IMG/VR virus record: IMGVR_UViG_3300017917_001123
Span: 1 to 64,000 of that record
Strand: one strand, 5' to 3'
DNA: 64,000 nt
Part shown: one piece after another, positions 221 through 38,849 of the stretch
Layout of the letters: the number at the start of each line of letters is the position of its first letter
Position numbering within the stretch: the stretch's first letter is position 1
Notes under the pieces: generated by a model
Databases searched by the model: none
Seen by the model: only the letters and a program-made list of their open reading frames with translations
What the model was told of the DNA's origin: nothing
Program-made: the position numbers and the translations under genes

Positions 221-294
221 GCGGGGTTCGTATAGTGGTAATACCTCAGCCTTCCAAGCTGATGCGGAGAGTTCGATTCTCTTACCCCGCTCCA
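221..294 (+). tRNA. tRNA-Gly (TCC)
   Basis: Cloverleaf; anticodon arm TCAGC-CT-TCC-AA-GCTGA; T loop TTCGATT; encoded CCA. Confidence 0.96.
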
Positions 295-4659: not shown

Positions 4660-4733
4660 GCTCCTGTAGTATAAAGGCAGTACACTTCCTTGGTAAGGAT
4701 GAGACGCTGGATCGTTACCAGCCTGGAGCACCA
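4660..4733 (+). tRNA. tRNA-Thr (GGT)
   Basis: Acceptor GCTCCTG/CTGGAGC, anticodon loop TT-GGT-AA, atypical T loop ATCGTTA, ACCA. Confidence 0.88.
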
Positions 4734-5561: not shown

Positions 5562-5637
5562 GCCCTAGTAGCTCAGTTGGTAGAGCAACTGATTTGTAAT
5601 CAGTAGGTCCGCGGTTCGAGTCCGTGCTGGGGCACCA
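5562..5637 (+). tRNA. tRNA-Thr (TGT)
   Basis: Canonical cloverleaf, ACTGA-TT-TGT-AA-TCAGT, ACCA. Confidence 0.96.
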
Positions 5638-19484: not shown

Positions 19485-20013
19485 GCGACACACTTTCCAA
19501 AGAGAAGGTTACGTAAAACGCCAGGCAGAAAAGGGCGAACCTGTCAATGAGGCATACGTCGACATGTTCGATAAAATCCTTGAACAGGAAGAACACAAGT
19601 TCGACGAACCAGAATCACGCAAAGACAACCTAGAATGGGATTTGCGTTCTACTGAATGGATCCTTGAAAAGGCTCGTGCTAAAGAGTCGTATGCCCAAAA
19701 TATCTATGCGGCATTGTGTAATACCGAATGGCAACGTTTGGATGTTATGCCCATTTTAAAGGACCAACGTTGGTCTTGCTCCTGGCGCTATGCTGGAGGT
19801 ATTGTGGCAGATATGCGACAAGAGGGCGACTACATTGATTGGTACTGCTCTGGAATGGGCGGGCTCAACATGGAATACGACGGCAAAGAAACTAACGAGC
19901 AATGGCAAAAGCGAACTGGCTACGTTCCAGAAAGCGTAGTTACTGACGAAATTCGGGCAGATTTCCAAAAGCTAGGTTGGATTTTGGTTGAATCCGACGA
20001 CGATTCTGCTTGA
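19444..20013 (+). CDS. Hypothetical phage protein
   Basis: YAQNIYAALCN...WSCSWR...YIDWYCSG. Confidence 0.75.
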   Translation: MPTNSEKNVSKSPERHTFQREGYVKRQAEKGEPVNEAYVDMFDKILEQEEHKFDEPESRKDNLEWDLRSTEWILEKARAKESYAQNIYAALCNTEWQRLDVMPILKDQRWSCSWRYAGGIVADMRQEGDYIDWYCSGMGGLNMEYDGKETNEQWQKRTGYVPESVVTDEIRADFQKLGWILVESDDDSA

Positions 20014-20038
20014 CAAATACCAAAACATCTCTTATAAT
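20010..20038 (+). promoter_or_regulatory. sigma70 promoter
   Basis: TTGACA-17-TATAAT. Confidence 0.8.
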
Positions 20039-21537: not shown

Positions 21538-21966
21538 ATGACTAAGAAACTTGACCGCAAAACTGTAGAAATTGGTAAGAAGCGTATTCCGCTTCGCAAG
21601 CTTCTACATGGCAAAGAAATCCGCGAAGCCGCAAAAGCTCTCGAAGATTTCCGTTTAGGACTAAATGAGCAAGAGCTCCTTTATGGAGCCAAGCTCACTG
21701 TTAAAATGGACAGTTACGGAGAAGCGGTATTGTATGCTCATCGTTTGGAGACAGACAAAGAGTATGCTGATCGGATTGAAAAGGCTCGAATTGCGGCCGA
21801 ACAAAAAGCCGAACGTGAACGTAAACGTAAGCTAATGGAGGTAGAACGAGCTGAACGAGCTAAGGAAATTCAAAAGCAAAAAGCTCTTGAAAGCATCCTA
21901 TCTATCGCAAAAGCAAACGGTTTGGGCAATGAAGAATTGGAAAAATTGCTCAAAGCATCCAATTGA
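21538..21966 (+). CDS. Hypothetical coiled-coil protein
   Basis: 142-aa ORF. Confidence 0.75.
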   Translation: MTKKLDRKTVEIGKKRIPLRKLLHGKEIREAAKALEDFRLGLNEQELLYGAKLTVKMDSYGEAVLYAHRLETDKEYADRIEKARIAAEQKAERERKRKLMEVERAERAKEIQKQKALESILSIAKANGLGNEELEKLLKASN

Positions 21967-21991
21967 CAAAGTGGTAAAAAGGTTGTATAAT
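21963..21991 (+). promoter_or_regulatory. sigma70 promoter
   Basis: TTGACA-17-TATAAT. Confidence 0.8.
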
Positions 21992-26289: not shown

Positions 26290-26610
26290 ATGGACGCAAG
26301 GCTTAAAAAACATTTAGATAAACTTCACGCATTTGACAACGAACGAAAGGGTTGGTTAATCCTTAGCTCATTCGTTGTGGCAACAGTCCTTGGAATTATT
26401 TTTGAATGGGATCATATTGTTGCTAGTAGGTACCTTTGGCTAATCGGTAGCGCAGGACTAGTGTTATCAGTCTGTTGGTGGTACTGGGCAATGAGATTAG
26501 TCCGACATCTTTTAGAATCCAAAAACGACGAATACCAATTACTAAGCGACATTGTCGATATGGTAAAAGCGGTAAAGCACGACGTTAAAAAATTAGACGA
26601 CAAGTCTTGA
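26290..26610 (+). CDS. Two-TM membrane protein
   Basis: Two hydrophobic segments; GGAG RBS. Confidence 0.7.
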   Translation: MDARLKKHLDKLHAFDNERKGWLILSSFVVATVLGIIFEWDHIVASRYLWLIGSAGLVLSVCWWYWAMRLVRHLLESKNDEYQLLSDIVDMVKAVKHDVKKLDDKS

Positions 26611-26680
26611 CCTATTAAATAAGACCGTATATAATTACATTATGCGGTCTCAGGCATTCATCCCGCAATATAAATTCTGC
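26607..26680 (+). promoter_or_regulatory. sigma70 promoter followed by preQ1-I-like leader
   Basis: TTGACC-17-TATAAT; TGCGG/CCGCA stem + A-rich tail. Confidence 0.55.
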
Positions 26681-26711
26681 GTGTCATCAAACTTACTGAA
26701 AAGGGCAAGAG

Positions 26712-27263
26712 ATGACTTGGATCATTGATAAAACATTTGAATTCTGCTATGGTCACAGAGTTCACACACAAACATTAAACGGCGAATATGCCGCTGACCT
26801 AAAATGCGCTTGTCGCCATCTTCATGGACACGAAGGCAAGATGCAGGTATTCCTTACAGCACCGCAACTAGATAAAACTGGTATGGTTACTGACTTTAGA
26901 CACCTAGAATGGCTAAAGAAATGGATCAATACATATATTGATCATCAGTTTGTTATTGATAGGAACGATCCACTTTATGATAAAATTATTGGCAATCGTG
27001 GGCTTGTGCCTGTACATATTCCTGATACTGATCATGTCGCCGGATGGCATTTGGACCTCACTGGATTGGAGTCAAACTCTCCGGAGTATGAATATTACGA
27101 AGGGTTCATGGTAGTAGACTTTGTTCCAACTTCCGAAAAGCTCAGTGCTTGGATGGCTGAACTTGTAGAAGCCAAAATGAAGAAGCTCGGAGTAACTGTA
27201 CATCACATCGATTGGTGGGAAACTCCAAAATCTCGCTCTGTATTTTACCGAGACGGCTTGTAA
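26712..27263 (+). CDS. queD: 6-carboxytetrahydropterin synthase QueD-like
   Basis: GHR...CRHLHGH, GMVTDF, DH, PTSE, WET. Confidence 0.9.
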   Translation: MTWIIDKTFEFCYGHRVHTQTLNGEYAADLKCACRHLHGHEGKMQVFLTAPQLDKTGMVTDFRHLEWLKKWINTYIDHQFVIDRNDPLYDKIIGNRGLVPVHIPDTDHVAGWHLDLTGLESNSPEYEYYEGFMVVDFVPTSEKLSAWMAELVEAKMKKLGVTVHHIDWWETPKSRSVFYRDGL

Positions 27264-27292
27264 TGTTCCAGAAATCGTGTTATAATAGTAAC

Positions 27293-28867: not shown

Positions 28868-29602
28868 ATGCTGAAAATAAAAAATCTAACCGCAGTAGCA
28901 CACGAACAACAAGTACTAACTGACATCAACTTACAAGTCGAAGAAGACGAAGTCCATGCGATCATTGGCCCAGAAAAAGCTGGAAAAACAGCCCTAATGT
29001 ACGCACTTGTTGGGTTACCTTATATAGAGGTAGCTGAAGGAACTATACACTATAAACGTAAAAAAATAAACGCTATGCCTATGCATGAGCGTAGTTTGAG
29101 CGGCATTGTTGGTGTATTTCAAGAAATGATCGAAGTGCCTAATTTAACAAATTGGGAGCTCTTAGAAGCTGTTTTAAAATATCGCAAAGATCCAAGAAAC
29201 ATAGACGATCTAAAAGAACTATATGTAACTCATTGCTTAATGCTAGGGCTAGATCCAATCCACGGTGATTTAGAAGCATCAAGCGACACAATGGACTATG
29301 AGCAAGCAGTTAAAAACGAACTGCTGATAATGTTCATGCTAAACCCTAAACTAGCACTAATTGATAACTTTGATGAAAAGTTAGACGAAGAAAATAAAAA
29401 GTTGCTAGCCGAAAGCATTGCTGATATGGCACACGCCGGTGGCCGAGCAACTATTGTATTTTCAAAAAACAAAGCAGTATTAGAAACAATCAATCCTACT
29501 CATGTACACGTTATGGTTGATGGAAAGCTAGTACTATCTGGTGGAAAAGAATTATTACAAAGGATAGAAGAAGATGGGTATTCAGAGCTTTCTGCAAGCT
29601 GA
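28868..29602 (+). CDS. SufC-like ABC ATPase (degenerate motifs)
   Basis: EVHAIIGPEKAGKT, PTHVHVMVDGKLVLSGG.EL...E..GY; Walker B DN, no signature or His. Confidence 0.75.
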   Translation: MLKIKNLTAVAHEQQVLTDINLQVEEDEVHAIIGPEKAGKTALMYALVGLPYIEVAEGTIHYKRKKINAMPMHERSLSGIVGVFQEMIEVPNLTNWELLEAVLKYRKDPRNIDDLKELYVTHCLMLGLDPIHGDLEASSDTMDYEQAVKNELLIMFMLNPKLALIDNFDEKLDEENKKLLAESIADMAHAGGRATIVFSKNKAVLETINPTHVHVMVDGKLVLSGGKELLQRIEEDGYSELSAS

Positions 29603-30404
29603 AAAGGGTGATCCGGATTGGCTGTTTAGTCCAGATGAATATTTTGGAAAACAATTTAAACTATCGGACGCAAATACTATAGAGCTAAAGGACGGAAGGA
29701 CCGATAGCATTACTCTACGCCTAAGTCCTAACGAATCAGGAATGCTAGCCAAGCATCTTCGTATTGATGTTAGGGAAGAAGCAACTCTCGACTTAATTGT
29801 TATTAACGAATCTAGTCCCAAAACACAGCAGGTCTTTATCTACGATATTAAAATTCGTGAAGGCGGCCTTTTAAACCTAGGGATCTTTGCCAAGGGCGGA
29901 AAGTTTAACAAACATATATTTCAAGTAAGCATTGAAGACGGTGGAAATTTTGCCAGCTATGGTTACATTAGCAACAACGACGGCGGCGATACTGAGGTCA
30001 TTACCAAAGTCTTTCAACAGGGCGTACATTCATTGTGTACGCAGTTAATTGGAGCCCAGGCCGGAAAAGACAGTCAAACAGTCTATCAAGGAATGGTTCG
30101 AATTGACGGTGAAGCAGAACTTGCTGAAGCTGGCTTAGAAAGCGTTAACATTGTTACAGGAGATAACGGTCGTTGCTGGAGTAGACCAGAAGTGTTGAGC
30201 GAAACAATTACAGCAAAGACCCGATACGGAAGCCAGACAACTTGTTTAGATAGCAACATTACCTATTATCTAGCAAGTAAGGGGTTGCCACCAGAAGTAT
30301 CTCAAAAGGTTGTACTTAACAGCTTTCAAACTCCAATCTTTAACCTTGTTAAACAGGAAGATATTCGAGAAGAAGTAGAACAGTTATTCAATACGCAAGA
30401 ATAA
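29574..30404 (+). CDS. SufD/SufB-like beta-helix protein
   Basis: YQG.VRI..A..A, SRPE, YYLASKGL. Confidence 0.7.
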   Translation: MGIQSFLQAEKGDPDWLFSPDEYFGKQFKLSDANTIELKDGRTDSITLRLSPNESGMLAKHLRIDVREEATLDLIVINESSPKTQQVFIYDIKIREGGLLNLGIFAKGGKFNKHIFQVSIEDGGNFASYGYISNNDGGDTEVITKVFQQGVHSLCTQLIGAQAGKDSQTVYQGMVRIDGEAELAEAGLESVNIVTGDNGRCWSRPEVLSETITAKTRYGSQTTCLDSNITYYLASKGLPPEVSQKVVLNSFQTPIFNLVKQEDIREEVEQLFNTQE

Positions 30405-30482: not shown

Positions 30483-33400
30483 ATGGCAACTACTTCATCA
30501 AATAGACTAATAATTAACCTTGGTTCGCAAGCAAACGATGGTACAGGTGACGCAATTAGAGCGGCATTTGACAAGGTTAATCAAAACTTTGAGACAATTT
30601 TCAACGTAGCAGGTATCGGTTCGGGCCTGTTATTCACTAAACTAGCAGATGCTCCAAGATTGCTGTCGGCCAACAAAATGTTGGTTACAGACGCAACAGG
30701 TTTAACTGTAACACAAATGTCTATAGTTGGTGCCCAGGGCATCCAAGTAACTGTAGACCAAGGCCAAAAGCGTGTTTTAATTGACGCAACAGTAACAAAC
30801 TTAGTTAACGATCCTAACCCAGTTCTTTCTAATAACTTGAGCGGCGGTGTTGTTAATCGCGGTATAAATTTTGCTGATCCAGTTGATGATCAAGACATCG
30901 CAACAAAGAAATGGATCTACGATAACTTCCTAAATCGCGATTCTAACTACCAATACATTTCAAGTACAAACCCAATCACAGGTGCCAATGTTACATCTAC
31001 GATCGTAGAAGGTAGCACACTACGCCACAATATCCAAATTCAGCCTACAGGTGTAAACACAGCATCTAACGCAGGAAAGGTTATTACACTATTTGACAGC
31101 GACGGTGTTAGCCTAAAAGACTTTGATGTGTCAGTAGGTGCTTGGAGACCAAGCCACGTAACTCGTAAAGATTATGTTGATACAAAGATTTCTTTACAGG
31201 GTATCGACACCATTGATCCAGAGACAGGACAAATTAATCCTAGCTTTGGTCAGATGACCGGACCTCTATACCTATCGAGAGATCCGCGAGAACAAGACCC
31301 AGGCAACGTAGCCGCAACAAAGGCCTATGTCGACTCTGTAGGTTTTCCAAGCCGTCAAAACTTTTATGTAAGTTTGAATGGTAGTGATGCTCGTTATGAT
31401 ATTCCAGCATACAAGCGAGGACGTTCTTTTGCTTGGGCTTTCCGTACAGTTAACAAAGCCGCTCAGGCCGCATTACAGTATTCCAAAGCATCTGAAATTA
31501 AGCTAGGTGTTTACCAGCGTGTTATTACTTCTAACAACTACAAAACTCCTGTTGAGATTTTAAGTATTGGTCCAGGAACAATTTCTGGAACATATAAAAT
31601 TAGTGTAACCTACACAGGCGGAAACGGTACTGATCCTTTCATTGAAAGAAGTATTCGTCCAGGACAGTTCTTACAAGGTATTAGTACAAACGCAATTGGT
31701 GAAATTCTAAACGTTGCTTTAGAGCCAGCAAGTAACGTCGAAGAATACTATGAAGTCCGTTTAGTCGACTACGCAGATACATTCGAATCACCTATTACTC
31801 CTAGCGACCTAGCAGGTGAAGTAACATTTACTCTGTTTGAGCCAAACTTAATTGAGATTCCAGATTTCTGGATCGGTTATAAGTTTGTAGTCGATAGTGT
31901 AGCAGGCGGCGGTGTCGGTGAAATTATTGGATTCGATTTATACTACCACCCTAACGGTAACATTTATAACCAAGTTATTGTTAGAATGAGCGAGCCATTA
32001 AGTAGCACAAACATTATTAGTGGTGACAACTGGCACGTTTATTCTGGTTACTTCAGCGTTGGCGAATCTTTACGCTACGGTCAAAAGTATAACAAACTAG
32101 AAATTTCTATTCTTGTTGAGTCTGGCGAATTTAACGAACAGCTACCGATTAGAATTGGCGACAACATTTCTGTTAAAGGTGATGAATTCCGTCGTACAAT
32201 GATCAAGCCAGCCTACGTTAGAGGTACAGCACGTTGCGGTATTTCTACAAGTAAGTGGGCTAACATTTGGTTCCGCAGAGACACGCAGATTGACGGTATT
32301 ATTGTTACACAATTAAACACATCAACTGATTATGCGGCTCTAACTACAGCAACTCCAGATGGTGTAACAAACGATGCTTCAACAGAAGTAATCACATTTA
32401 CACTAGGCTCAGGTACTGCTGATCCAGACTGGATTAAGAAAGTCTTTATTGGAGCAGGTGGCCGAGGTGAAATTAAAGCAGTTCTAGGTAATACATTCAC
32501 GGTTGACATTGCTGAAAACGACAACGGTATTAGAAGAATCGATAGTGCGGCACCTATTGCCGCAGGTGATTGGAGCATTTATGAACCATACAACTTTGGT
32601 TACCATTACCTAAGAGATGCTAGCCGTCCATTAAACTTCTTAGCAGGTCCTAACCCAGGTGGTTACAACTTCGCTTCAAAGATTCTATTAGACAACATCG
32701 AGTTTATTAAGTCCGAAGTAATTGGTTGGATCGACCAAACATACAGTGGCGGATTTACATATAACGTAGCTGACTTCCAACGCAACACTGGATTGTTAGT
32801 CGATGCGGTTGCTCAAGATTTATTATTCAGCGGAACAAGCCAAGCAACATTTGCGGGCTTGTTAAATTGGAATCGAAACGGCGTACAATCTGCCTTTGCT
32901 GGCGGTGTAACTATTGCTTCAAATGCTGTAACATACATTAAAGAATTAGCACAGAAAGTTGTCCAGAAAGATTTAACAGGTACAAGATACCAAAGTGCTG
33001 TAACTCAAACAACATCTGGCATTGGAGCGGCAACTCCAGCAGAAGCATCTACAATCGCTGCCGACATAGATGTTATTCTAAATATTTTCTTGAACGGAAC
33101 AGCTGATGTTCAAGATACAATTATTCCAAACGGATTAACTAAGAGTTCAGATCCTGATGTACAGAATGCTCACGATTTGTTACAAGCAAACAAGCTCTAC
33201 ATCCAAGCAGAAGCTATTGCCTTTGTTGAAGCAACCAAAGCTAATGGATTTACATACGATCAAAACAAATACACTCAAAATTTTGGATTTATTGTTGACG
33301 CAGTAAGTACAGACCTTCTATACGGTGGTAATAAACAATCTGTCCAACTTGGAACATATTACTGGAACTTTGATGGCAGTTCATCAGCAATTGCAAACGA

Positions 33401-36400
33401 ACTTTCACAAACAGTTGCGGCTTATAACTACATCAAATCAATTCTGCCAGATATCATCCAAGGTACCGCTCTAGCAGTAACACAACAAAATACTGTTCCT
33501 CAAGTTATTATTGGCTACGGTCCAGGAGATGCTTCTGCTGTAACACAAGCACAGGCTAAGATTGATGTTGTTACTAACATTACTTCTAACGGTCCAAGTG
33601 TGGCTAGTGCTCAAAGCACATTACCGTTAACAAGAAGCACTGATCCAGATATTATCAACGGAGCAATTTTACTATCAGCAAACAGAACATTTATTATTGC
33701 TGAAACTATTGCGTTTGTTAATAATTCTTTCTTAACAGGATTTGTTTACGATAGAGAAACTTGCCGTAGAGACATTGGCTTAATTGTCGATGCGTTAGCA
33801 TTTGACTTAAAGAACGGTGATATTAACTCATCAATTAACGCGGCTGATAGCTATTACGCAGGCAATGTTCAACAAGTTCTTCAAAACGAACTAGCACAAA
33901 CTGTGGGCGCAATCGGTTATATTAATACTCTAGCGCAACAACTATTTGATCAAACTCCTATTACAACACTATACGGTTTTGTTCCACAGAGAATAGACAC
34001 TATTATTGGTGAAGTAGGGGCAAAGGCTCAAGTTACCAACCTAACTACAGCAATGCAGGGTATCTTAAACAACGATCCTGCGTTCAACCCACCTAAGTAT
34101 AACGACGAAATGGACATCTTCTTAATGAACGATGCGACCATGTTACGTTACTTAGGCGGTAACGGTCACGGTGGCTTTATGAAGGTACTTGACCCAGAAG
34201 GACAAATTAAATCTAAGTCACCATATACTCAGACATGTTCATCATTCTCACAGAGTATTGGCCGACACAGATTTGCTGGTGGTTTCTTTGTTGACGGATT
34301 CTGCGGTAACTTGCCATTAGTTACAGCAGCCGGTACAGCAAGTCCAGATACAAACGGTAACTTAATTTACATTCCAGTAACTGGCGTGAGACGTTTACCT
34401 GTATTCCCAACTTACTTTATTCACGAAGGTGTTAAGTACGAAGCGGACTACATGCAGAATTATGACCCAGTTAACCAAACTGGTACTCTTGTTCTAAACC
34501 CAAACAACCCAGGTGGTATTAGTTCCGTAAGTGTTAACAGCGGAAATACACAAAACGAATTTAAACCGAACGTTGCTCAACTACCAGTAACATTTAGTTC
34601 TCCAGGCACACCTGGTGGTGCTACTGCTCGTGGTTATGCTGTAACTAACGCATCTGGTAATATACAAACCATTGTTATCACATTCCCAGGTGTAGGATAT
34701 GTAACAGAACCAAGTGTTAGCCTAGGCGGTGCTACGTTTAACTTTATTATCGACGGCGGTGCTATTACATCAATGTCTGTCAACTACGGCGGTATTGGTT
34801 ATACAACAGGTACACAAATTAATATTGCAAGTCCAGGCGGTGCCGGGTTAACTGCTACCGCAACAATTACAGGTGTTGACGGACTTGGCGCAATTACTTC
34901 TATCAATTTAGTATCAGGCGGTACAGGATACACTAGTGTTCCAACTGTTACATTTGGTCGTCAAGTATTCAGCGCAAACTTAGTAAACGGCTTTATTGGC
35001 AATTTACCATCAAAACTAGAACTAATTACTGCTGGTAACCGTTCTATGTTAGCCAACGACTTTACACAGTTAAACGATTTAGGCTATGGTATTTTTGCTA
35101 CCAACGGTGGATTCATCGAAAACGTTTCGATGTTCACTTACTACTGCTATACCTCATACTACGCACTGAACGGTGCTATTCTAAGAACTATTACAGGTTC
35201 TACAGCTTACGGTACTTACGGTCTAGTCGCAGAAGGTTCAAACCCATTAGAGGTACCAACTGCGGTTACAATGTCAGACGAATTAACACAGATTGCTACT
35301 GTTTATAATCAGGCTCCGTACATTAACGCCAAAGGCGGTGCTGACATTTATGTAACACTAGACAGCACCTACGGTTACCCTCCATACTCTAATGGGGAAA
35401 TTGAGATCAATCACAACGGTATTAGAAAGACATATTCTCTAAGATCTGCTAAACAGATTTCTGGAAACTTATATGCTCTATCAATTGATTCAACCGGTGG
35501 TGGATTATACGCTATTGTTCCGAACGGCGAGCCGTTGACAATTCGTGTTAAGTTTATTTGGAGACTAGGCGGCTTAAATGCTAAGACATTAACTCGTCCA
35601 AGTACAGTTTTAACACTGGCGGAAAACTCAATTTACAACTACCGTATTCTAGAGTACACAGACTTAGGTAGTGACTATGCGTTAGCTGAAGCTGATCAGT
35701 CATATGACTACATTCAACTAACTCCATACAGTCAGAGTAACCTATATCGCCAAGGTGTTGGTCGCCCAACTATCAGCGTTGCTGGTAGTGGTTACACTTC
35801 GACAACTACACAGTATGGTGTAACATTTGACAGTCCTCCATCAAAGACTGCGGTAGTTAACGGTGTTCAGGGAACTGTTGATAGTCCAGTAACACAGTTA
35901 TCGATCGCAAGTTCTAGCGGAGCAATTCACCCTGGTATGAGAATTACTGGTGCTGGCGCTATTGCTAACCAGTACGTAACTTGGGTGAGCTTGGATAGAT
36001 CTATTATTCAAACAAGCCAGGCACAGGTTTGGTCGACTGCAAGTGCTACACTAACATTTGTTGGTACTACCGCAACTGGTTATGCCAAGGCCAACGGAAC
36101 AAGCATTACTGGAATCACAATTACTGATCCCGGTACTGGTTACGACACAGCGCCAGGTGTTACAATCGTACCCGGAAGTGGTGTACAAGCTCAGGCAACT
36201 GTTTCCTTAAGCGGTACAAGCGGAACTAACATTGTTAAGGTTCTTCCTTTAAATGGACAAGATACTGCTCGTATTAACATTGGACTAACAAGCCCAACTC
36301 CATACTATTACGTATTTGGTTACGAAGGTCAGACTTATAAGATTACAGATTATAAGACTCCTGTTCAAACAGGTCAAGCATGGGGCGAAATTCAAATTTC

Positions 36401-38849
36401 TGGTTACAATAACGCATTGGCTACTCTAACAAGAGAAATGATGCTAGATCCATTGTATGCCGGTGTAACTAAAAACACTCCAGGATCTGTTACTGTTCAA
36501 ATTTCAACATTACGTGCTACAGCTCACGATATGATTGACGTCGGTACTGGCGGTTACGCAACTTCCAAGATACCGAACGACTTATACGGACCTCCAACAA
36601 TTACTCCAAACCCTGCTCAAGAAGTTCTTGAGAAAGGTAAAGGTCGTGTTTACTATGTAACAACAGACCAGGACGGTAACTTCCGCGTTGGTAAGTATTT
36701 TGCCGTTGACCAAGGCCGCGGTACTGTTACAATTAGTGCTCCAATTAGCTTAACTGGTATTAGTAAGTTGAGTTTCAAGAAGGGCGTCGAAGTTGACGAG
36801 TTCTCTAAAGACGACACCATGGCAACCGGTAGCCTAAGCAAGGTACCTGTAGAAACAGCTATTATCGGTTACATTGATAAACGTCTAGGTATTGATAAAT
36901 CTGGCTCTGTAGCAACTGGTATTATTGGCCCAGCTGTTATGGCGCTAAACGGTGTTAATGCTATGACTGGTTCCTTAAACATGGGTTCCAACAAGATCAT
37001 TAACCTACAAGTTCCGACAAGTTCAAGTGACGGCGCAACTAAAGGTTACGTTGACGGCAAGATAAGCCTAGACGGTATGGATGAAAACACAAATGATGGC
37101 GGTCAAGATGCCGGCATCATGAATGGTCCATTACGTCTAAATGCTGATCCGGGTATAATTACCGCTGTAACAACAGCAACAGTAAACATCGGTAACACAG
37201 TTGTTTACTTAAACTCAACAGCCGGTTTGTATAAAGGCATGCAGTTGAATACTAGCGGTTTTGCTCCTGGCGCATTTATTTCGCAGATTAATAATAGTAC
37301 TGCTATTACCGTGAGCGCGGCCGCAGTAGGTCAGGTATTAAACGGCGTAACTGTTACATTTGATCCAGTTCGCCAGGGCGCAACAAAACGTTATGTCGAT
37401 CGTTCAGCACAAATTACTAAACTACGTGACGTTGTTTTAACAAGTGCGGCAGATACTGACTTATTAATGTTTGGTGGTTTACTAAGTGCTAACAGCAATA
37501 CTTCGACTCCGCTGTACGAAGCAAGTCGTAGCGTTATTAACGTAACAAATAATACTTCGGCAATTACTAATACAGCATCATCAAGTGGCGGTGGTAGTGA
37601 TATTACAGTATCTCGTTCAAACAATCAAGTAACATTCAAGTTAGTCGGTGGACAAGGTGCGGCAAACCCAATTACTAACTATCACGTTAACGACAATGCG
37701 GCAATTGCCCAAAGCAAGTTAAACATGCAGGCCGCAGGTGTAACACCAAGTTCAGCAGGCGTTGTTCAAGCAAGTCGTGGTCTAGCAGTATTTGATCAAT
37801 ATGTGTTTACAGCAACTAACGGTTGGATTAGCTTAGTCGATTCTGCTACTACTACCGACGGTGTTGCTCCAAGCAAACTACGTCAAGTAGGCGCAGGTGG
37901 TGCATTAATTGGTAACACAAACTTAGCCGCAGGCGGAGCAATGAGCTACTTGTCTAGCTCTACTGTCCGTGCTTGGTTAGGTGTTATTGATTCTGCGTCA
38001 GGCGGTACATTTAACGGTGACCTAAACGTTAATAATATATTTGCCAATGCGGCTGGTACATACGACATTGGATCTTCAGGAACTCGATTTAGAGCAATCT
38101 ATGGCGGAACTGGTAGCTTTAGCGGCAACGTAACTGATAACGGTAACCGTGTACTAACAAGCGTAACATTAAGCGCAGGTGACAACATTGGTGTAGCAAG
38201 TTCTAAGACTGGCGCAGACTATGCTCTATCTGTAACTAACTTAGGTGTACGTACTATTGCTGGTACTGCTAACCAAGTGTTTGTTGGTGGTGGATCGGCA
38301 ACTGCCGCAACAACTGGTACTGTAACACTAAGTTTACCACAAAACATTCATACTGCGGCAGATGTTCAGTTTAACAAGGCAAGCCTAAAATACCTAACAG
38401 CGGTAGATGCTGGTAGTGGTTGGGCCGTTGTTCAAGGAACATGGAAACTAGACACAAATGCTAGCTTCCAAGCAACATACGCTGACTTGGCAGAACGTTA
38501 CACCAGCGATGTTCAATACGAGCCAGGAACAGTTCTAGTGTTCGGCGGTGAAAAAGAAGTTACAATCAGTTCTGTTGCTAACGATCGTCGAGTAGCAGGT
38601 GTTGTTTCTACAAATCCTGCTTACAACATGAACACATCAATTGAAGGTGTTGATATTGCTCTACAAGGCCGTGTACCATGTAAAGTAGTAGGATACATTA
38701 AGAAAGGTGACCTAATGGTAACTAGTTCGATTCCAGGCGTTGCGACAAGCAATGATGATCCTAAGACAGGTACTATTATTGGTAAGGCATTGGAAGATTA
38801 TAACAGCAATGATGTTGGCATAATCGAAGTAGCAGTAGGAAGACTATAA
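30483..38849 (+). CDS. Giant tail fibre/baseplate structural protein with C-terminal intramolecular-chaperone-like domain
   Basis: ANDGTGDAIRAAFDKVN N-terminus, ATK.YVD repeats, G.GYT..P repeats, YADLAERY...ALQGRVPCKV...IIGKALE. Confidence 0.85.
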   Translation: MATTSSNRLIINLGSQANDGTGDAIRAAFDKVNQNFETIFNVAGIGSGLLFTKLADAPRLLSANKMLVTDATGLTVTQMSIVGAQGIQVTVDQGQKRVLIDATVTNLVNDPNPVLSNNLSGGVVNRGINFADPVDDQDIATKKWIYDNFLNRDSNYQYISSTNPITGANVTSTIVEGSTLRHNIQIQPTGVNTASNAGKVITLFDSDGVSLKDFDVSVGAWRPSHVTRKDYVDTKISLQGIDTIDPETGQINPSFGQMTGPLYLSRDPREQDPGNVAATKAYVDSVGFPSRQNFYVSLNGSDARYDIPAYKRGRSFAWAFRTVNKAAQAALQYSKASEIKLGVYQRVITSNNYKTPVEILSIGPGTISGTYKISVTYTGGNGTDPFIERSIRPGQFLQGISTNAIGEILNVALEPASNVEEYYEVRLVDYADTFESPITPSDLAGEVTFTLFEPNLIEIPDFWIGYKFVVDSVAGGGVGEIIGFDLYYHPNGNIYNQVIVRMSEPLSSTNIISGDNWHVYSGYFSVGESLRYGQKYNKLEISILVESGEFNEQLPIRIGDNISVKGDEFRRTMIKPAYVRGTARCGISTSKWANIWFRRDTQIDGIIVTQLNTSTDYAALTTATPDGVTNDASTEVITFTLGSGTADPDWIKKVFIGAGGRGEIKAVLGNTFTVDIAENDNGIRRIDSAAPIAAGDWSIYEPYNFGYHYLRDASRPLNFLAGPNPGGYNFASKILLDNIEFIKSEVIGWIDQTYSGGFTYNVADFQRNTGLLVDAVAQDLLFSGTSQATFAGLLNWNRNGVQSAFAGGVTIASNAVTYIKELAQKVVQKDLTGTRYQSAVTQTTSGIGAATPAEASTIAADIDVILNIFLNGTADVQDTIIPNGLTKSSDPDVQNAHDLLQANKLYIQAEAIAFVEATKANGFTYDQNKYTQNFGFIVDAVSTDLLYGGNKQSVQLGTYYWNFDGSSSAIANELSQTVAAYNYIKSILPDIIQGTALAVTQQNTVPQVIIGYGPGDASAVTQAQAKIDVVTNITSNGPSVASAQSTLPLTRSTDPDIINGAILLSANRTFIIAETIAFVNNSFLTGFVYDRETCRRDIGLIVDALAFDLKNGDINSSINAADSYYAGNVQQVLQNELAQTVGAIGYINTLAQQLFDQTPITTLYGFVPQRIDTIIGEVGAKAQVTNLTTAMQGILNNDPAFNPPKYNDEMDIFLMNDATMLRYLGGNGHGGFMKVLDPEGQIKSKSPYTQTCSSFSQSIGRHRFAGGFFVDGFCGNLPLVTAAGTASPDTNGNLIYIPVTGVRRLPVFPTYFIHEGVKYEADYMQNYDPVNQTGTLVLNPNNPGGISSVSVNSGNTQNEFKPNVAQLPVTFSSPGTPGGATARGYAVTNASGNIQTIVITFPGVGYVTEPSVSLGGATFNFIIDGGAITSMSVNYGGIGYTTGTQINIASPGGAGLTATATITGVDGLGAITSINLVSGGTGYTSVPTVTFGRQVFSANLVNGFIGNLPSKLELITAGNRSMLANDFTQLNDLGYGIFATNGGFIENVSMFTYYCYTSYYALNGAILRTITGSTAYGTYGLVAEGSNPLEVPTAVTMSDELTQIATVYNQAPYINAKGGADIYVTLDSTYGYPPYSNGEIEINHNGIRKTYSLRSAKQISGNLYALSIDSTGGGLYAIVPNGEPLTIRVKFIWRLGGLNAKTLTRPSTVLTLAENSIYNYRILEYTDLGSDYALAEADQSYDYIQLTPYSQSNLYRQGVGRPTISVAGSGYTSTTTQYGVTFDSPPSKTAVVNGVQGTVDSPVTQLSIASSSGAIHPGMRITGAGAIANQYVTWVSLDRSIIQTSQAQVWSTASATLTFVGTTATGYAKANGTSITGITITDPGTGYDTAPGVTIVPGSGVQAQATVSLSGTSGTNIVKVLPLNGQDTARINIGLTSPTPYYYVFGYEGQTYKITDYKTPVQTGQAWGEIQISGYNNALATLTREMMLDPLYAGVTKNTPGSVTVQISTLRATAHDMIDVGTGGYATSKIPNDLYGPPTITPNPAQEVLEKGKGRVYYVTTDQDGNFRVGKYFAVDQGRGTVTISAPISLTGISKLSFKKGVEVDEFSKDDTMATGSLSKVPVETAIIGYIDKRLGIDKSGSVATGIIGPAVMALNGVNAMTGSLNMGSNKIINLQVPTSSSDGATKGYVDGKISLDGMDENTNDGGQDAGIMNGPLRLNADPGIITAVTTATVNIGNTVVYLNSTAGLYKGMQLNTSGFAPGAFISQINNSTAITVSAAAVGQVLNGVTVTFDPVRQGATKRYVDRSAQITKLRDVVLTSAADTDLLMFGGLLSANSNTSTPLYEASRSVINVTNNTSAITNTASSSGGGSDITVSRSNNQVTFKLVGGQGAANPITNYHVNDNAAIAQSKLNMQAAGVTPSSAGVVQASRGLAVFDQYVFTATNGWISLVDSATTTDGVAPSKLRQVGAGGALIGNTNLAAGGAMSYLSSSTVRAWLGVIDSASGGTFNGDLNVNNIFANAAGTYDIGSSGTRFRAIYGGTGSFSGNVTDNGNRVLTSVTLSAGDNIGVASSKTGADYALSVTNLGVRTIAGTANQVFVGGGSATAATTGTVTLSLPQNIHTAADVQFNKASLKYLTAVDAGSGWAVVQGTWKLDTNASFQATYADLAERYTSDVQYEPGTVLVFGGEKEVTISSVANDRRVAGVVSTNPAYNMNTSIEGVDIALQGRVPCKVVGYIKKGDLMVTSSIPGVATSNDDPKTGTIIGKALEDYNSNDVGIIEVAVGRL

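What the first reader, a model, noticed from the sequence alone, without database searches (positions are those of the whole stretch)
26643..26680. preQ1-I-like pseudoknot at the transcription start of phage queD
Seen: directly after a TTGACC-17-TATAAT promoter come a 5-bp stem TGCGG/CCGCA, a 15-nt loop ending in C, an A-rich tail and CAG/CTG loop-tail pairing. Known: preQ1-I riboswitches are H-type pseudoknots of this layout upstream of que genes. Inference: a phage riboswitch variant sensing preQ0/preQ1 and tuning 7-deazaguanine synthesis.
Basis: partly seen in the sequence, partly recalled or inferred. Interest (0 to 1): 0.62.

Follow-up and report, generated by a model that had tools for sequence, protein, structure and literature searches.

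The report
Phage-only pseudoknot switch before queD
The short leader in front of this giant phage's queD gene is a real, strongly conserved RNA pseudoknot found in hundreds of uncultured water phages; it resembles the smallest known riboswitch (preQ1-I) but matches no catalogued family and seems wired to switch translation on, not off.

Summary
The promoter, the 5-bp stem and the loop ending in C are at the stated coordinates.

Leaders of queD homologues in IMG/VR phage contigs gave 267 loci and 175 distinct aptamer sequences. They define a 43-nt H-type pseudoknot (window 26643-26685):
- P1 is TGCGG/CCGCA.
- P2 is GGCAT/GTGTC, extended past a U.C mismatch by CA/TG.
- Both helices covary strongly.
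- Invariant unpaired bases include the C just before the P1 3' strand and A.A.A.YUC in the tail.

Every instance precedes a PTPS/QueD-family gene. The element usually starts 4-11 nt after a promoter-like box. It was essentially absent from the bacterial genomes sampled and from the 8 isolate phages whose queD regions were scanned. No Rfam 15 family matches, preQ1-I included.

The P2 3' strand also pairs with the start codon or Shine-Dalgarno sequence in 93 of 97 leaders. Pseudoknot formation should therefore free the ribosome site, which makes this an inferred ON switch.

Six near-complete genomes carry folE and queD but no full-length queC and no tgt/dpdA; queE was checked only in the window's genome and none was found. 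The ligand is therefore open: a 7-deazaguanine or a pterin.

Verdict: a real, apparently undescribed, phage-specific riboswitch candidate related in layout to preQ1-I.

The parts
26607..26635 (+). Sigma-70-type promoter: TTGACC, 17 nt, TATAAT. The predicted start is about 26642, one base before P1.
   Evidence: The promoter scan scores it 11 of 12. In relatives, 78 of 135 distinct upstream regions have a -10-like or T4-late-like box ending 4-11 nt (mode 7) before P1.
26643..26647 (+). P1 5' strand, TGCGG.
   Evidence: Pairs with 26663-67. Covaries across relatives: AGAGG/CCTCT, AGTGG/CCACT, AGCGG/CCGCT, ACCGG/CCGGT, ATCGG/CCGAT, AGACG/CGTCT.
26648..26652 (+). L1, TCTCA. Its positions 2-3 (C, T) are near-invariant in the family. 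L1 is 4-7 nt long in relatives.
26653..26660 (+). P2 5' strand: GGCAT (P2a), T26658 (the conserved U.C mismatch with C26680), and C26659-A26660 (P2b).
   Evidence: P2a covaries: GACGC/GTGTC, GGCAT/ATGCC, GACTT/AAGTC, GACAA/TTGTC, GACAG/CTGTC, GGTG/CACC. P2b: A:U in 90 and G:C in 4; C:G in 93 and U:A in 1; no uncompensated change in 94 sequences.
26661..26662 (+). L2, T then C. C26662 is invariant and sits where the preQ1-I specificity cytosine sits.
   Evidence: Invariant in all parsed aptamers. Position as defined in PMC11625349.
26663..26667 (+). P1 3' strand, CCGCA.
26668..26677 (+). L3 tail, ATATAAATTC. Positions 3, 5 and 7 are A; the last three are Y, T, C; all are conserved.
   Evidence: The invariance was first seen in the set found by protein homology, not by RNA pattern.
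26678..26685 (+). P2 3' strand: T26678-G26679 (P2b), C26680 (mismatch partner), GTGTC 26681-85 (P2a).
26683..26716 (+). Sequestor hairpin. GTCATC 26683-88 pairs with GATGAC 26711-16, which holds ATG 26712-14. An inner helix covers the purine-rich Shine-Dalgarno tract, about 26700-26711. The hairpin shares GTC 26683-85 with P2.
   Evidence: It is part of the minimum-energy fold. It folds at -8.7 kcal/mol, against -2.2 without the P2 strand. Equivalent helices cover the ATG or SD in 93 of 97 leaders and beat shuffled sequence.
26712..27263 (+). queD-like gene, 183 aa, PTPS family, with a Cys-x3-His-Gly-His motif.
   Evidence: Pfam PF01242, 92.6 bits. The QueD equivalog TIGR03367 gives 55.7 bits, below its cut-off of 89.

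Best explanation
Window 26643-26685 is the aptamer-like domain of a cis-regulatory RNA family found so far almost only in uncultured aquatic phages, always in front of a PTPS/QueD-family gene.

Shown:
- It is an H-type pseudoknot with a 5-bp P1.
- Its P2 has 5 pairs plus 2 further pairs across a conserved U.C mismatch.
- Both helices covary.
- Several unpaired bases are invariant, including a C immediately 5' of the P1 3' strand.
- The P2 3' strand can alternatively pair with the start codon or the Shine-Dalgarno region.

Inferred:
- It is a riboswitch. A small molecule with a guanine-like face pairs with the invariant C and stacks between P1 and P2, as preQ1 does in class I preQ1 riboswitches.
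- Candidate ligands are preQ0, preQ1 or another 7-deazaguanine, or a pterin of the FolE/QueD steps such as dihydroneopterin triphosphate or CPH4.
- Without ligand, the stronger sequestor hairpin (26683-88 with 26711-16) hides the ATG.
- With ligand, P2 is locked, the anti-start sequence is captured, and queD is translated. This is an ON switch.
For: Structure:
- P1 and P2 covary, with 0 of 500 shuffles reaching the observed score, and the pairing collapses when partners are slid by 1-3 columns.
- RNAalifold finds P1 independently.
- The L2/L3 double changes are never uncompensated.

Distribution:
- The motif is found upstream of 37 of 80, 77 of 80 and about 74 of 80 queD loci of three QueD clades. 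These loci were picked by protein homology only.
- 79 of 80 viral hits to the DNA pattern are real, against 1 of 80 bacterial hits.
- No real match in 151 sampled proteobacterial genomes; the one hit is inside a transporter gene.
- One copy in the window's own genome.
- All 116 downstream genes checked are PTPS family or an operon containing one.
- Promoter-like boxes end 4-11 nt before P1 in 78 of 135 upstream regions.

Switch logic:
- Several different platforms all pair the P2 3' strand with the ATG (61 leaders) or the SD (32 leaders) out of 97, with compensatory changes.
- Locking that strand raises predicted ribosome-site accessibility in 63 leaders and lowers it in 4.
- These helices beat shuffled sequence.
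- In the window the sequestor folds at -8.7 kcal/mol and P2 alone at -3.8.

Resemblance to preQ1-I:
- The family model gives a weak partial hit (9.5 bits, P1 plus the start of L3) on a genuine preQ1-I riboswitch.
Against: - No ligand binding, probing or expression data exist, and no RNA sequencing run holds this locus.
- No Rfam family matches.
- The window's own P2 is weak, with two G.U pairs.
- The ON reading comes from nested-structure thermodynamics that ignore pseudoknot and tertiary energies.
- Invariant single-stranded bases could equally be a protein-binding site.
- An ON switch answering to an end product such as preQ1 makes little regulatory sense. The ligand guess is therefore weak.
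- The sequences are related, so shuffle statistics overstate independence.
- Part of the collection (loci L089-L168) was found with a DNA pattern that fixes the invariant bases by construction.
Confidence: 0.7

Rival explanations
1. It is an ordinary member of the preQ1-I riboswitch class. It binds preQ1 or preQ0 and represses queD as product feedback.
For: - Same overall layout, the same invariant C position, a G-C floor pair, a tail with conserved A's, and a queuosine-pathway gene downstream (PMC11625349).
- Weak cross-recognition of a true preQ1-I by the family model.
Against: - RF00522 gives no hit at E <= 10 on the leader, nor in the whole phage genome.
- The first L1 base is not a conserved U.
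- L3 ends in YUC and is 10 nt long, and two L2 bases pair with L3.
- The P2 3' strand does not contain the SD. It pairs with the SD or ATG as an anti-sequence.
- The phages lack a full-length queC and tgt, and no queE was found in the window's genome.
Confidence: 0.12
2. It is a structured operator for a protein, or a ribosome-loading or stability element, and does not bind a metabolite. The protein could be, for example, QueD itself or a phage translational repressor.
For: - Invariant unpaired bases and a pseudoknot next to the ribosome site are also typical of protein operators.
- No ligand evidence exists.
- The element occurs in phages with different promoter types, so a shared phage or host factor is conceivable.
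Against: - The motif is tied to one enzyme family across unrelated neighbourhoods and across at least three QueD clades.
- Platforms are modular, either anti-ATG or anti-SD, around one constant aptamer.
- The pocket-like layout mirrors a known small-molecule aptamer.
Confidence: 0.15
3. It is a chance stem-loop beside a promoter. Alternatively, the relevant feature is a DNA inverted repeat across the -10 box (26622-31 with 26641-50) acting as a repressor operator.
For: - The single-sequence fold is no better than shuffles.
- A 10-nt inverted repeat with one mismatch does span the -10 box in the window. It explains the weak RyeA/SdsR-like Rfam hits.
Against: - 175 distinct aptamer sequences keep both helices through compensatory changes.
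- The inverted repeats near the promoters differ in position between relatives and do not cover P1 in most.
Confidence: 0.03

Closest known systems
preQ1-I riboswitch (Rfam RF00522; types I-III)
   Same: - Minimal H-type pseudoknot of about 35-45 nt.
- 5-bp P1 closed by G-C.
- Invariant cytosine immediately 5' of the P1 3' strand. In the window it is preceded by U, as in type I.
- Tail with conserved adenines, suited to the P1 minor groove.
- Lies in front of a queuosine-pathway gene.
   Different: - Not detected by the Rfam model.
- L1 is 4-7 nt with invariant C and U at positions 2-3, not a U directly after P1.
- P2 is longer: 5 pairs, a U.C mismatch, then 2 pairs that use what would be L2 and the end of L3.
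- L3 is 10 nt and ends in YUC instead of A.
- The P2 3' strand is an anti-start or anti-SD sequence, so the predicted response is ON.
- Found in phages and hardly at all in the bacterial genomes sampled.
THF-II (folE motif) and THF-I riboswitches
   Same: They sense a pterin-type ligand with a guanine-like face and control genes adjacent in metabolism (folE, folate genes). In two related phage genomes folE lies directly upstream of this motif.
   Different: From my own knowledge, THF-II is a hairpin with an internal loop and THF-I is a three-way junction. Neither is an H-type pseudoknot. Neither Rfam model scores here.
Other small H-type pseudoknot riboswitches (SAM-II/V, guanidine-III, fluoride)
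   Same: Same fold class. The ligand is held at or near the helix junction, and the pseudoknot strand competes with the expression platform.
   Different: Different conserved bases and different gene associations. No Rfam match.
Phage-borne riboswitches known so far (glutamine riboswitch in cyanophages and pelagiphage-like phages; c-di-GMP-I in prophages)
   Same: A cis-regulatory aptamer carried by a phage to control a phage gene (PMC5473149, PMC9004378).
   Different: Those are copies of bacterial classes and are rare in phages. This family was found almost only in phage contigs and is abundant there.

Membership tests
preQ1-I riboswitch (RF00522) | H-type pseudoknot: short P1 hairpin whose loop pairs with the 3' tail | tested here: met
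   Both helices are supported by covariation.
preQ1-I riboswitch (RF00522) | Strictly conserved specificity cytosine directly before the P1 3' strand, preceded by U (type I) or A (types II and III) (PMC11625349) | tested here: met
   The C is invariant. The preceding base is U, A or C. In the window these are U26661 and C26662.
preQ1-I riboswitch (RF00522) | Conserved G-C closing pair of P1 as the pocket floor | tested here: met
   G5-C is invariant in 99 of 99 sequences.
preQ1-I riboswitch (RF00522) | Conserved U at the first L1 position, reading the ligand's N9 | tested here: not met
   The first L1 base is A, U or C (41, 32 and 24 sequences). The conserved bases are C and U at positions 2-3.
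preQ1-I riboswitch (RF00522) | A-rich L3 whose last adenine reads the ligand's edge and is followed at once by the P2 3' strand | tested here: not met
   L3 keeps A at positions 3, 5 and 7 but ends in Y-U-C. The next two bases pair with L2.
preQ1-I riboswitch (RF00522) | Reaches the Rfam gathering score (39 bits) | tested here: not met
   No hit at E <= 10 on the leader. None in 12 related loci at gathering threshold. The best hits in the whole phage genome score 9.6 bits and lie elsewhere.
preQ1-I riboswitch (RF00522) | Ligand-bound fold hides the SD or forms a terminator (OFF) | tested here: not met
   The P2 3' strand pairs with the SD or ATG as an anti-sequence, so locking it raises predicted accessibility. 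This rests on prediction only.
preQ1-I riboswitch (RF00522) | Binds preQ1 or preQ0 | not testable with these tools
   Needs in-line probing, ITC or a reporter assay.
Riboswitch (general definition) | Conserved aptamer with covarying helices and invariant junction bases, in the 5' leader of a metabolically coherent gene set | tested here: met
   175 distinct aptamer sequences. All 116 downstream genes checked are PTPS/QueD family or an operon containing one. Promoter-like boxes lie just upstream.
Riboswitch (general definition) | Variable expression platforms that compete with part of the aptamer | tested here: met
   There are anti-ATG and anti-SD variants, each overlapping the P2 3' strand.
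Riboswitch (general definition) | Direct, selective binding of a small molecule that changes expression | not testable with these tools
   No RNA or biochemical data are available.
preQ1-II / preQ1-III riboswitches | Match to the Rfam models | tested here: not met
   No hits. From my own knowledge these are HLout-type pseudoknots of roughly 80-100 nt, much longer than the 43-nt element here.

The most novel reading that the evidence does not exclude
This is a new riboswitch class native to phages, with probably more than a thousand copies in public viromes. It is built on a preQ1-I-like scaffold but has a remodelled pocket. That pocket recognises something other than preQ1, for example the QueD substrate dihydroneopterin triphosphate, its product CPH4, or preQ0. 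It turns queD translation ON. It would be the first abundant phage-specific metabolite sensor and the first ON-type relative of the preQ1 family.
Probability: 0.35. Interest if true: 0.9.

Novelty: new variant of a known kind. Interest (0 to 1): 0.8.

Why it matters
Riboswitches are reported to be rare in phages. The known cases are a few glutamine and c-di-GMP examples borrowed from bacteria (PMC5473149, PMC9004378).

This RNA family was found almost only in phage contigs. It covers most queD genes of three viral QueD clades and sits at the first committed step towards 7-deazaguanines.

If it binds a metabolite, it would show three things:
- Phages evolve their own small-molecule sensors.
- It would give a 43-nt aptamer with a pocket different from preQ1-I, useful for structural work and as a tool.
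- It would help explain why many large aquatic phages carry only folE and queD.

Its apparent ON logic would be new for this fold.

Tried and rejected
- **Rfam.** Searched at gathering threshold on the whole window, and at E <= 10 on the leader and on a relative. Only tRNAs and chance hits came back. RF00522 over the whole phage genome gave nothing at the locus.
- **Single-sequence folding.** Uninformative.
- **MAFFT alignments.** They misplaced the P1 5' strand because L1 varies in length. I replaced them with a subset alignment and covariance models.
Both rejected because relatives do not keep them.
- **GenBank phages.** No DNA match to the locus or to the leader. PA5oct, Vibrio phage 2.275.O, ACP17, R5C, X1, BUCT-ZZ01, Motura and Mendera have queD but no motif.
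- **Bacterial genomes.** 79 of 80 pattern hits were chance. The single hit among 151 sampled genomes lies inside a transporter gene.
- **que pathway in the window's own genome.**
  - tgt/dpdA is absent.
  - queC gives only a weak partial hit.
  - About 15 radical SAM genes are present, but none is queE-like.
- **Neighbouring genes of the motif.** No common partner.
- **Sequencing runs.** Only DNA runs hold the locus (pond, aquatic, estuary and wastewater metagenomes), so no transcript ends could be read.
- **Literature.** Eight full-text searches found no description of this motif. Paywalled papers are not covered.

Full report
**What the window is**

The window is the first 64 kb of a 331,570-bp IMG/VR virus record estimated 93% complete. 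The best DNA holder is a pond metagenome. Weaker partial holders are aquatic, estuary, wastewater and freshwater metagenomes.

The ORF at 26712-27263 is a PTPS/QueD-family protein. It scores 92.6 bits to Pfam PF01242. It scores 55.7 bits to the QueD equivalog TIGR03367, below that model's cut-off. It carries a Cys-x3-His-Gly-His motif.

Its neighbours are unrelated auxiliary genes: ClpP, UvdE, a SufC-like ATPase and SufBD.

**Checking the observation**

The sequence holds:
- TTGACC at 26607-12, a 17-nt spacer, and TATAAT at 26630-35 (11 of 12 matches).
- TGCGG at 26643-47 and CCGCA at 26663-67.
- A 15-nt loop ending in C26662.
- An A/T-rich tail.

Folded alone, the leader is no more stable than shuffled sequence (z = -0.21). 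Rfam reports nothing relevant even at E <= 10 on a 201-nt slice. From this one sequence the finding could not be told from chance.

**Comparative evidence**

A protein-guided scan of IMG/VR returned 80 loci encoding close QueD relatives. Thirty-seven of them have an alignable leader.

Parsing 21 distinct leaders gave one common layout:
- P1, 5 bp.
- L1, 4-7 nt, starting N-C-U.
- A 5-nt P2 strand.
- U-C-A-N-C.
- The P1 3' strand.
- A 13-nt tail ending U-C-U-G-C.
- A 5-nt P2 3' strand.

P1 changes as AGAGG/CCTCT, AGTGG/CCACT, TGCGG/CCGCA and AGACG/CGTCT. P2 changes as GACGC/GTGTC, GGCAT/GTGTC, GACAG/CTGTC and GGTG/CGCC.

Pair counts on this set:
- 96.5% of cells are standard pairs.
- 7 of 10 pairs carry double changes.
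- 0 of 500 shuffles reach the observed covariation score.
- Pairing collapses to 28-62% when partners are slid by 1-3 columns.

**A pattern search and a control**

I built a DNA pattern from the invariant bases. A covariance model confirmed 79 of the 80 loci returned, at 21-65 bits.

There, only 1 of 80 loci was a real match, and that one is a 5.5-kb contig of a metagenome bin.

A second model found nothing real in 151 sampled proteobacterial genomes. The single hit lies inside a transporter gene. It found one copy in the window's own genome.

**Removing the circularity of the pattern**

The pattern fixes the invariant bases by construction. To avoid that bias I fetched 160 more loci by homology to two other viral QueD clades.

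The motif lies directly upstream of queD in 77 of 80 loci of one clade and about 74 of 80 of the other.

These sets added:
- New P1 variants, ACCGG/CCGGT and ATCGG/CCGAT.
- A short variant with a 4-bp P1 and a tail 3 nt shorter.
- Two correlated changes outside the helices already defined.

The correlated changes are these. Whenever the A of U-C-A becomes G, the U of U-C-U-G-C becomes C (4 sequences). When the C of U-C-A becomes U, the G of U-C-U-G-C becomes A (1 sequence). There is no uncompensated change in 94 sequences (counted again).

P2 therefore continues past a conserved U.C mismatch by two Watson-Crick pairs. In the window:
- U26658 opposes C26680 (the mismatch).
- C26659 pairs with G26679.
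- A26660 pairs with U26678.
- The true L2 is U26661-C26662.
- L3 is 26668-77.

In all, 267 loci and 175 distinct aptamer sequences were collected.

**Gene association and position**

All 116 first downstream ORFs examined belong to one PTPS/QueD cluster, with one exception. In that case a CmoB-like methyltransferase precedes a PTPS gene.

Genes further downstream are diverse and show no common partner: UvdE, DAHP synthase, superoxide dismutase, sugar-nucleotide enzymes.

In 78 of 135 distinct upstream regions, a sigma-70-like -10 box or a T4-late-like TATAAATA box ends 4-11 nt before P1, most often 7 nt. The element therefore begins at or next to the 5' end of the transcript under different promoter types.

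**Expression platform**

In the window, GTCATC (26683-88) pairs with GATGAC (26711-16), which contains the ATG. This hairpin is part of the minimum-energy fold. It shares GTC with the P2 3' strand.

Across 97 distinct leaders I took the best helix between the P2 3' strand (plus a few following bases) and the ribosome-site region:
- It covers the ATG in 61 leaders and the Shine-Dalgarno sequence in 32.
- It overlaps P2 by at least 2 nt in 83.
- It comes in several sequence versions that keep complementarity, for example TGTCATC/GATGACA against TGCCATC/GATGGCA, and also TGCCATTG/CAATGGCA, CCTATG/CATAGG and TGTCTTC/GGAGACA.

These helices are stronger than shuffles: median empirical p is 0.025, and p <= 0.05 in 75% of leaders. 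Removing the P2 strand from the folding ensemble raises predicted ribosome-site accessibility in 63 leaders and lowers it in 4.

In the window the sequestor hairpin is worth -8.7 kcal/mol. The P2 duplex alone is worth -3.8. The default state should be closed, and extra stabilisation of P2 would be needed to open it. This is the wiring of a translational ON switch. It is an inference from secondary-structure models, not a measurement.

**Comparison with preQ1-I**

The comparison uses the class definition in PMC11625349.

Shared features:
- The H-type fold.
- A G-C floor pair.
- An invariant cytosine before the P1 3' strand.
- Conserved adenines in the tail.
- A queuosine-pathway gene downstream.

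Differences:
- L1 has no conserved U at its first position.
- The tail ends in Y-U-C, not in A.
- P2 is longer.
- Ligand binding should turn expression ON, not OFF.
- RF00522 fails to score it.

In the other direction, the family model gives only a 9.5-bit partial match, covering P1 and the start of the tail. That match is on a genuine preQ1-I riboswitch from a Lentibacillus genome that RF00522 scores at 50.9 bits.

I therefore do not file it as a preQ1-I member. It works like one in architecture, with a remodelled pocket.

**What the ligand might be**

The window's genome and five other records that are 95-100% complete carry the motif. Across these six genomes:
- All six have folE.
- None has tgt/dpdA.
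- None has a full-length queC; only partial PP-loop matches were seen.

The window's genome has about 15 radical SAM genes, but none reaches a QueE cut-off.

In at least two genomes folE lies immediately upstream of the motif. These phages thus encode GTP to dihydroneopterin triphosphate to, presumably, CPH4, and nothing further.

An ON switch fits a substrate or precursor signal better than end-product feedback. A pterin is therefore as good a candidate as preQ0 or preQ1. This cannot be settled here.

**Novelty**

- No Rfam 15 family matches.
- No isolate phage examined has the motif.
- Eight full-text searches found no description of it.
- Reviews state that riboswitches are rarely found in phages (PMC5473149; PMC9004378).
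- Subscription-only literature could not be searched.

**Verdict**

- The element is best described as an undescribed, phage-specific riboswitch candidate with a preQ1-I-like scaffold and predicted ON logic.
- My confidence that it is a real conserved structured leader is about 0.97.
- My confidence that it is a metabolite-binding switch working as described is about 0.7.
- My confidence that the ligand is a 7-deazaguanine is about 0.4.

Noticed in passing
window 26622-26650: A 10-nt inverted repeat with one mismatch: AGACCGTATA at 26622-31 and TATGCGGTCT at 26641-50. It spans the -10 box and overlaps the P1 5' strand. It explains the weak RyeA/SdsR-like Rfam hits. Relatives also have inverted repeats near their promoters, but at varying positions.
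   Followed up: partly
window 221-291, 397-470, 4660-4730, 5562-5634: Four tRNA genes at the start of the phage record.
   Followed up: no
window 28868-30404: A SufC-like ABC ATPase and a SufBD-family protein sit side by side. These are iron-sulphur cluster assembly genes carried by the phage. This may relate to the radical SAM cluster elsewhere in the genome.
   Followed up: no
window 30483-38849: A very long ORF of 2788 aa on the + strand. It was not analysed.
   Followed up: no
window 20010-20038, 21963-21991, 27258-27286: Two perfect-consensus TTGACA-17-TATAAT promoters. A third, with an extended TG -10, lies directly after the queD stop codon and in front of the UvdE gene.
   Followed up: no
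same phage record outside the window, G000 about 240,000-277,000 (L507, L508): A cluster of about 15 radical SAM genes. Some are twitch-domain radical SAM proteins at 324 and 397 bits; others are B12-binding or SPASM-like. A weakly QueC-like PP-loop ATPase ORF lies among them. This is unusual for a phage and was not explained.
   Followed up: partly
L408:297-322: A truncated second copy of the motif, with only P1 and the loop (model positions 1-26), about 600 nt upstream of the complete copy and in front of another small ORF.
   Followed up: no
L147:10700-11471: A related phage contig carries a tRNA and a permuted, betaproteobacterial-type tmRNA gene. This is a possible clue to the host.
   Followed up: no
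L483, L460, L477, L484, L486 (about 940-980): A short variant of the motif with a 4-bp P1 and a tail 3 nt shorter. Its P2 3' strand plus ATTAT pairs with ATAATGG at the start codon.
   Followed up: partly
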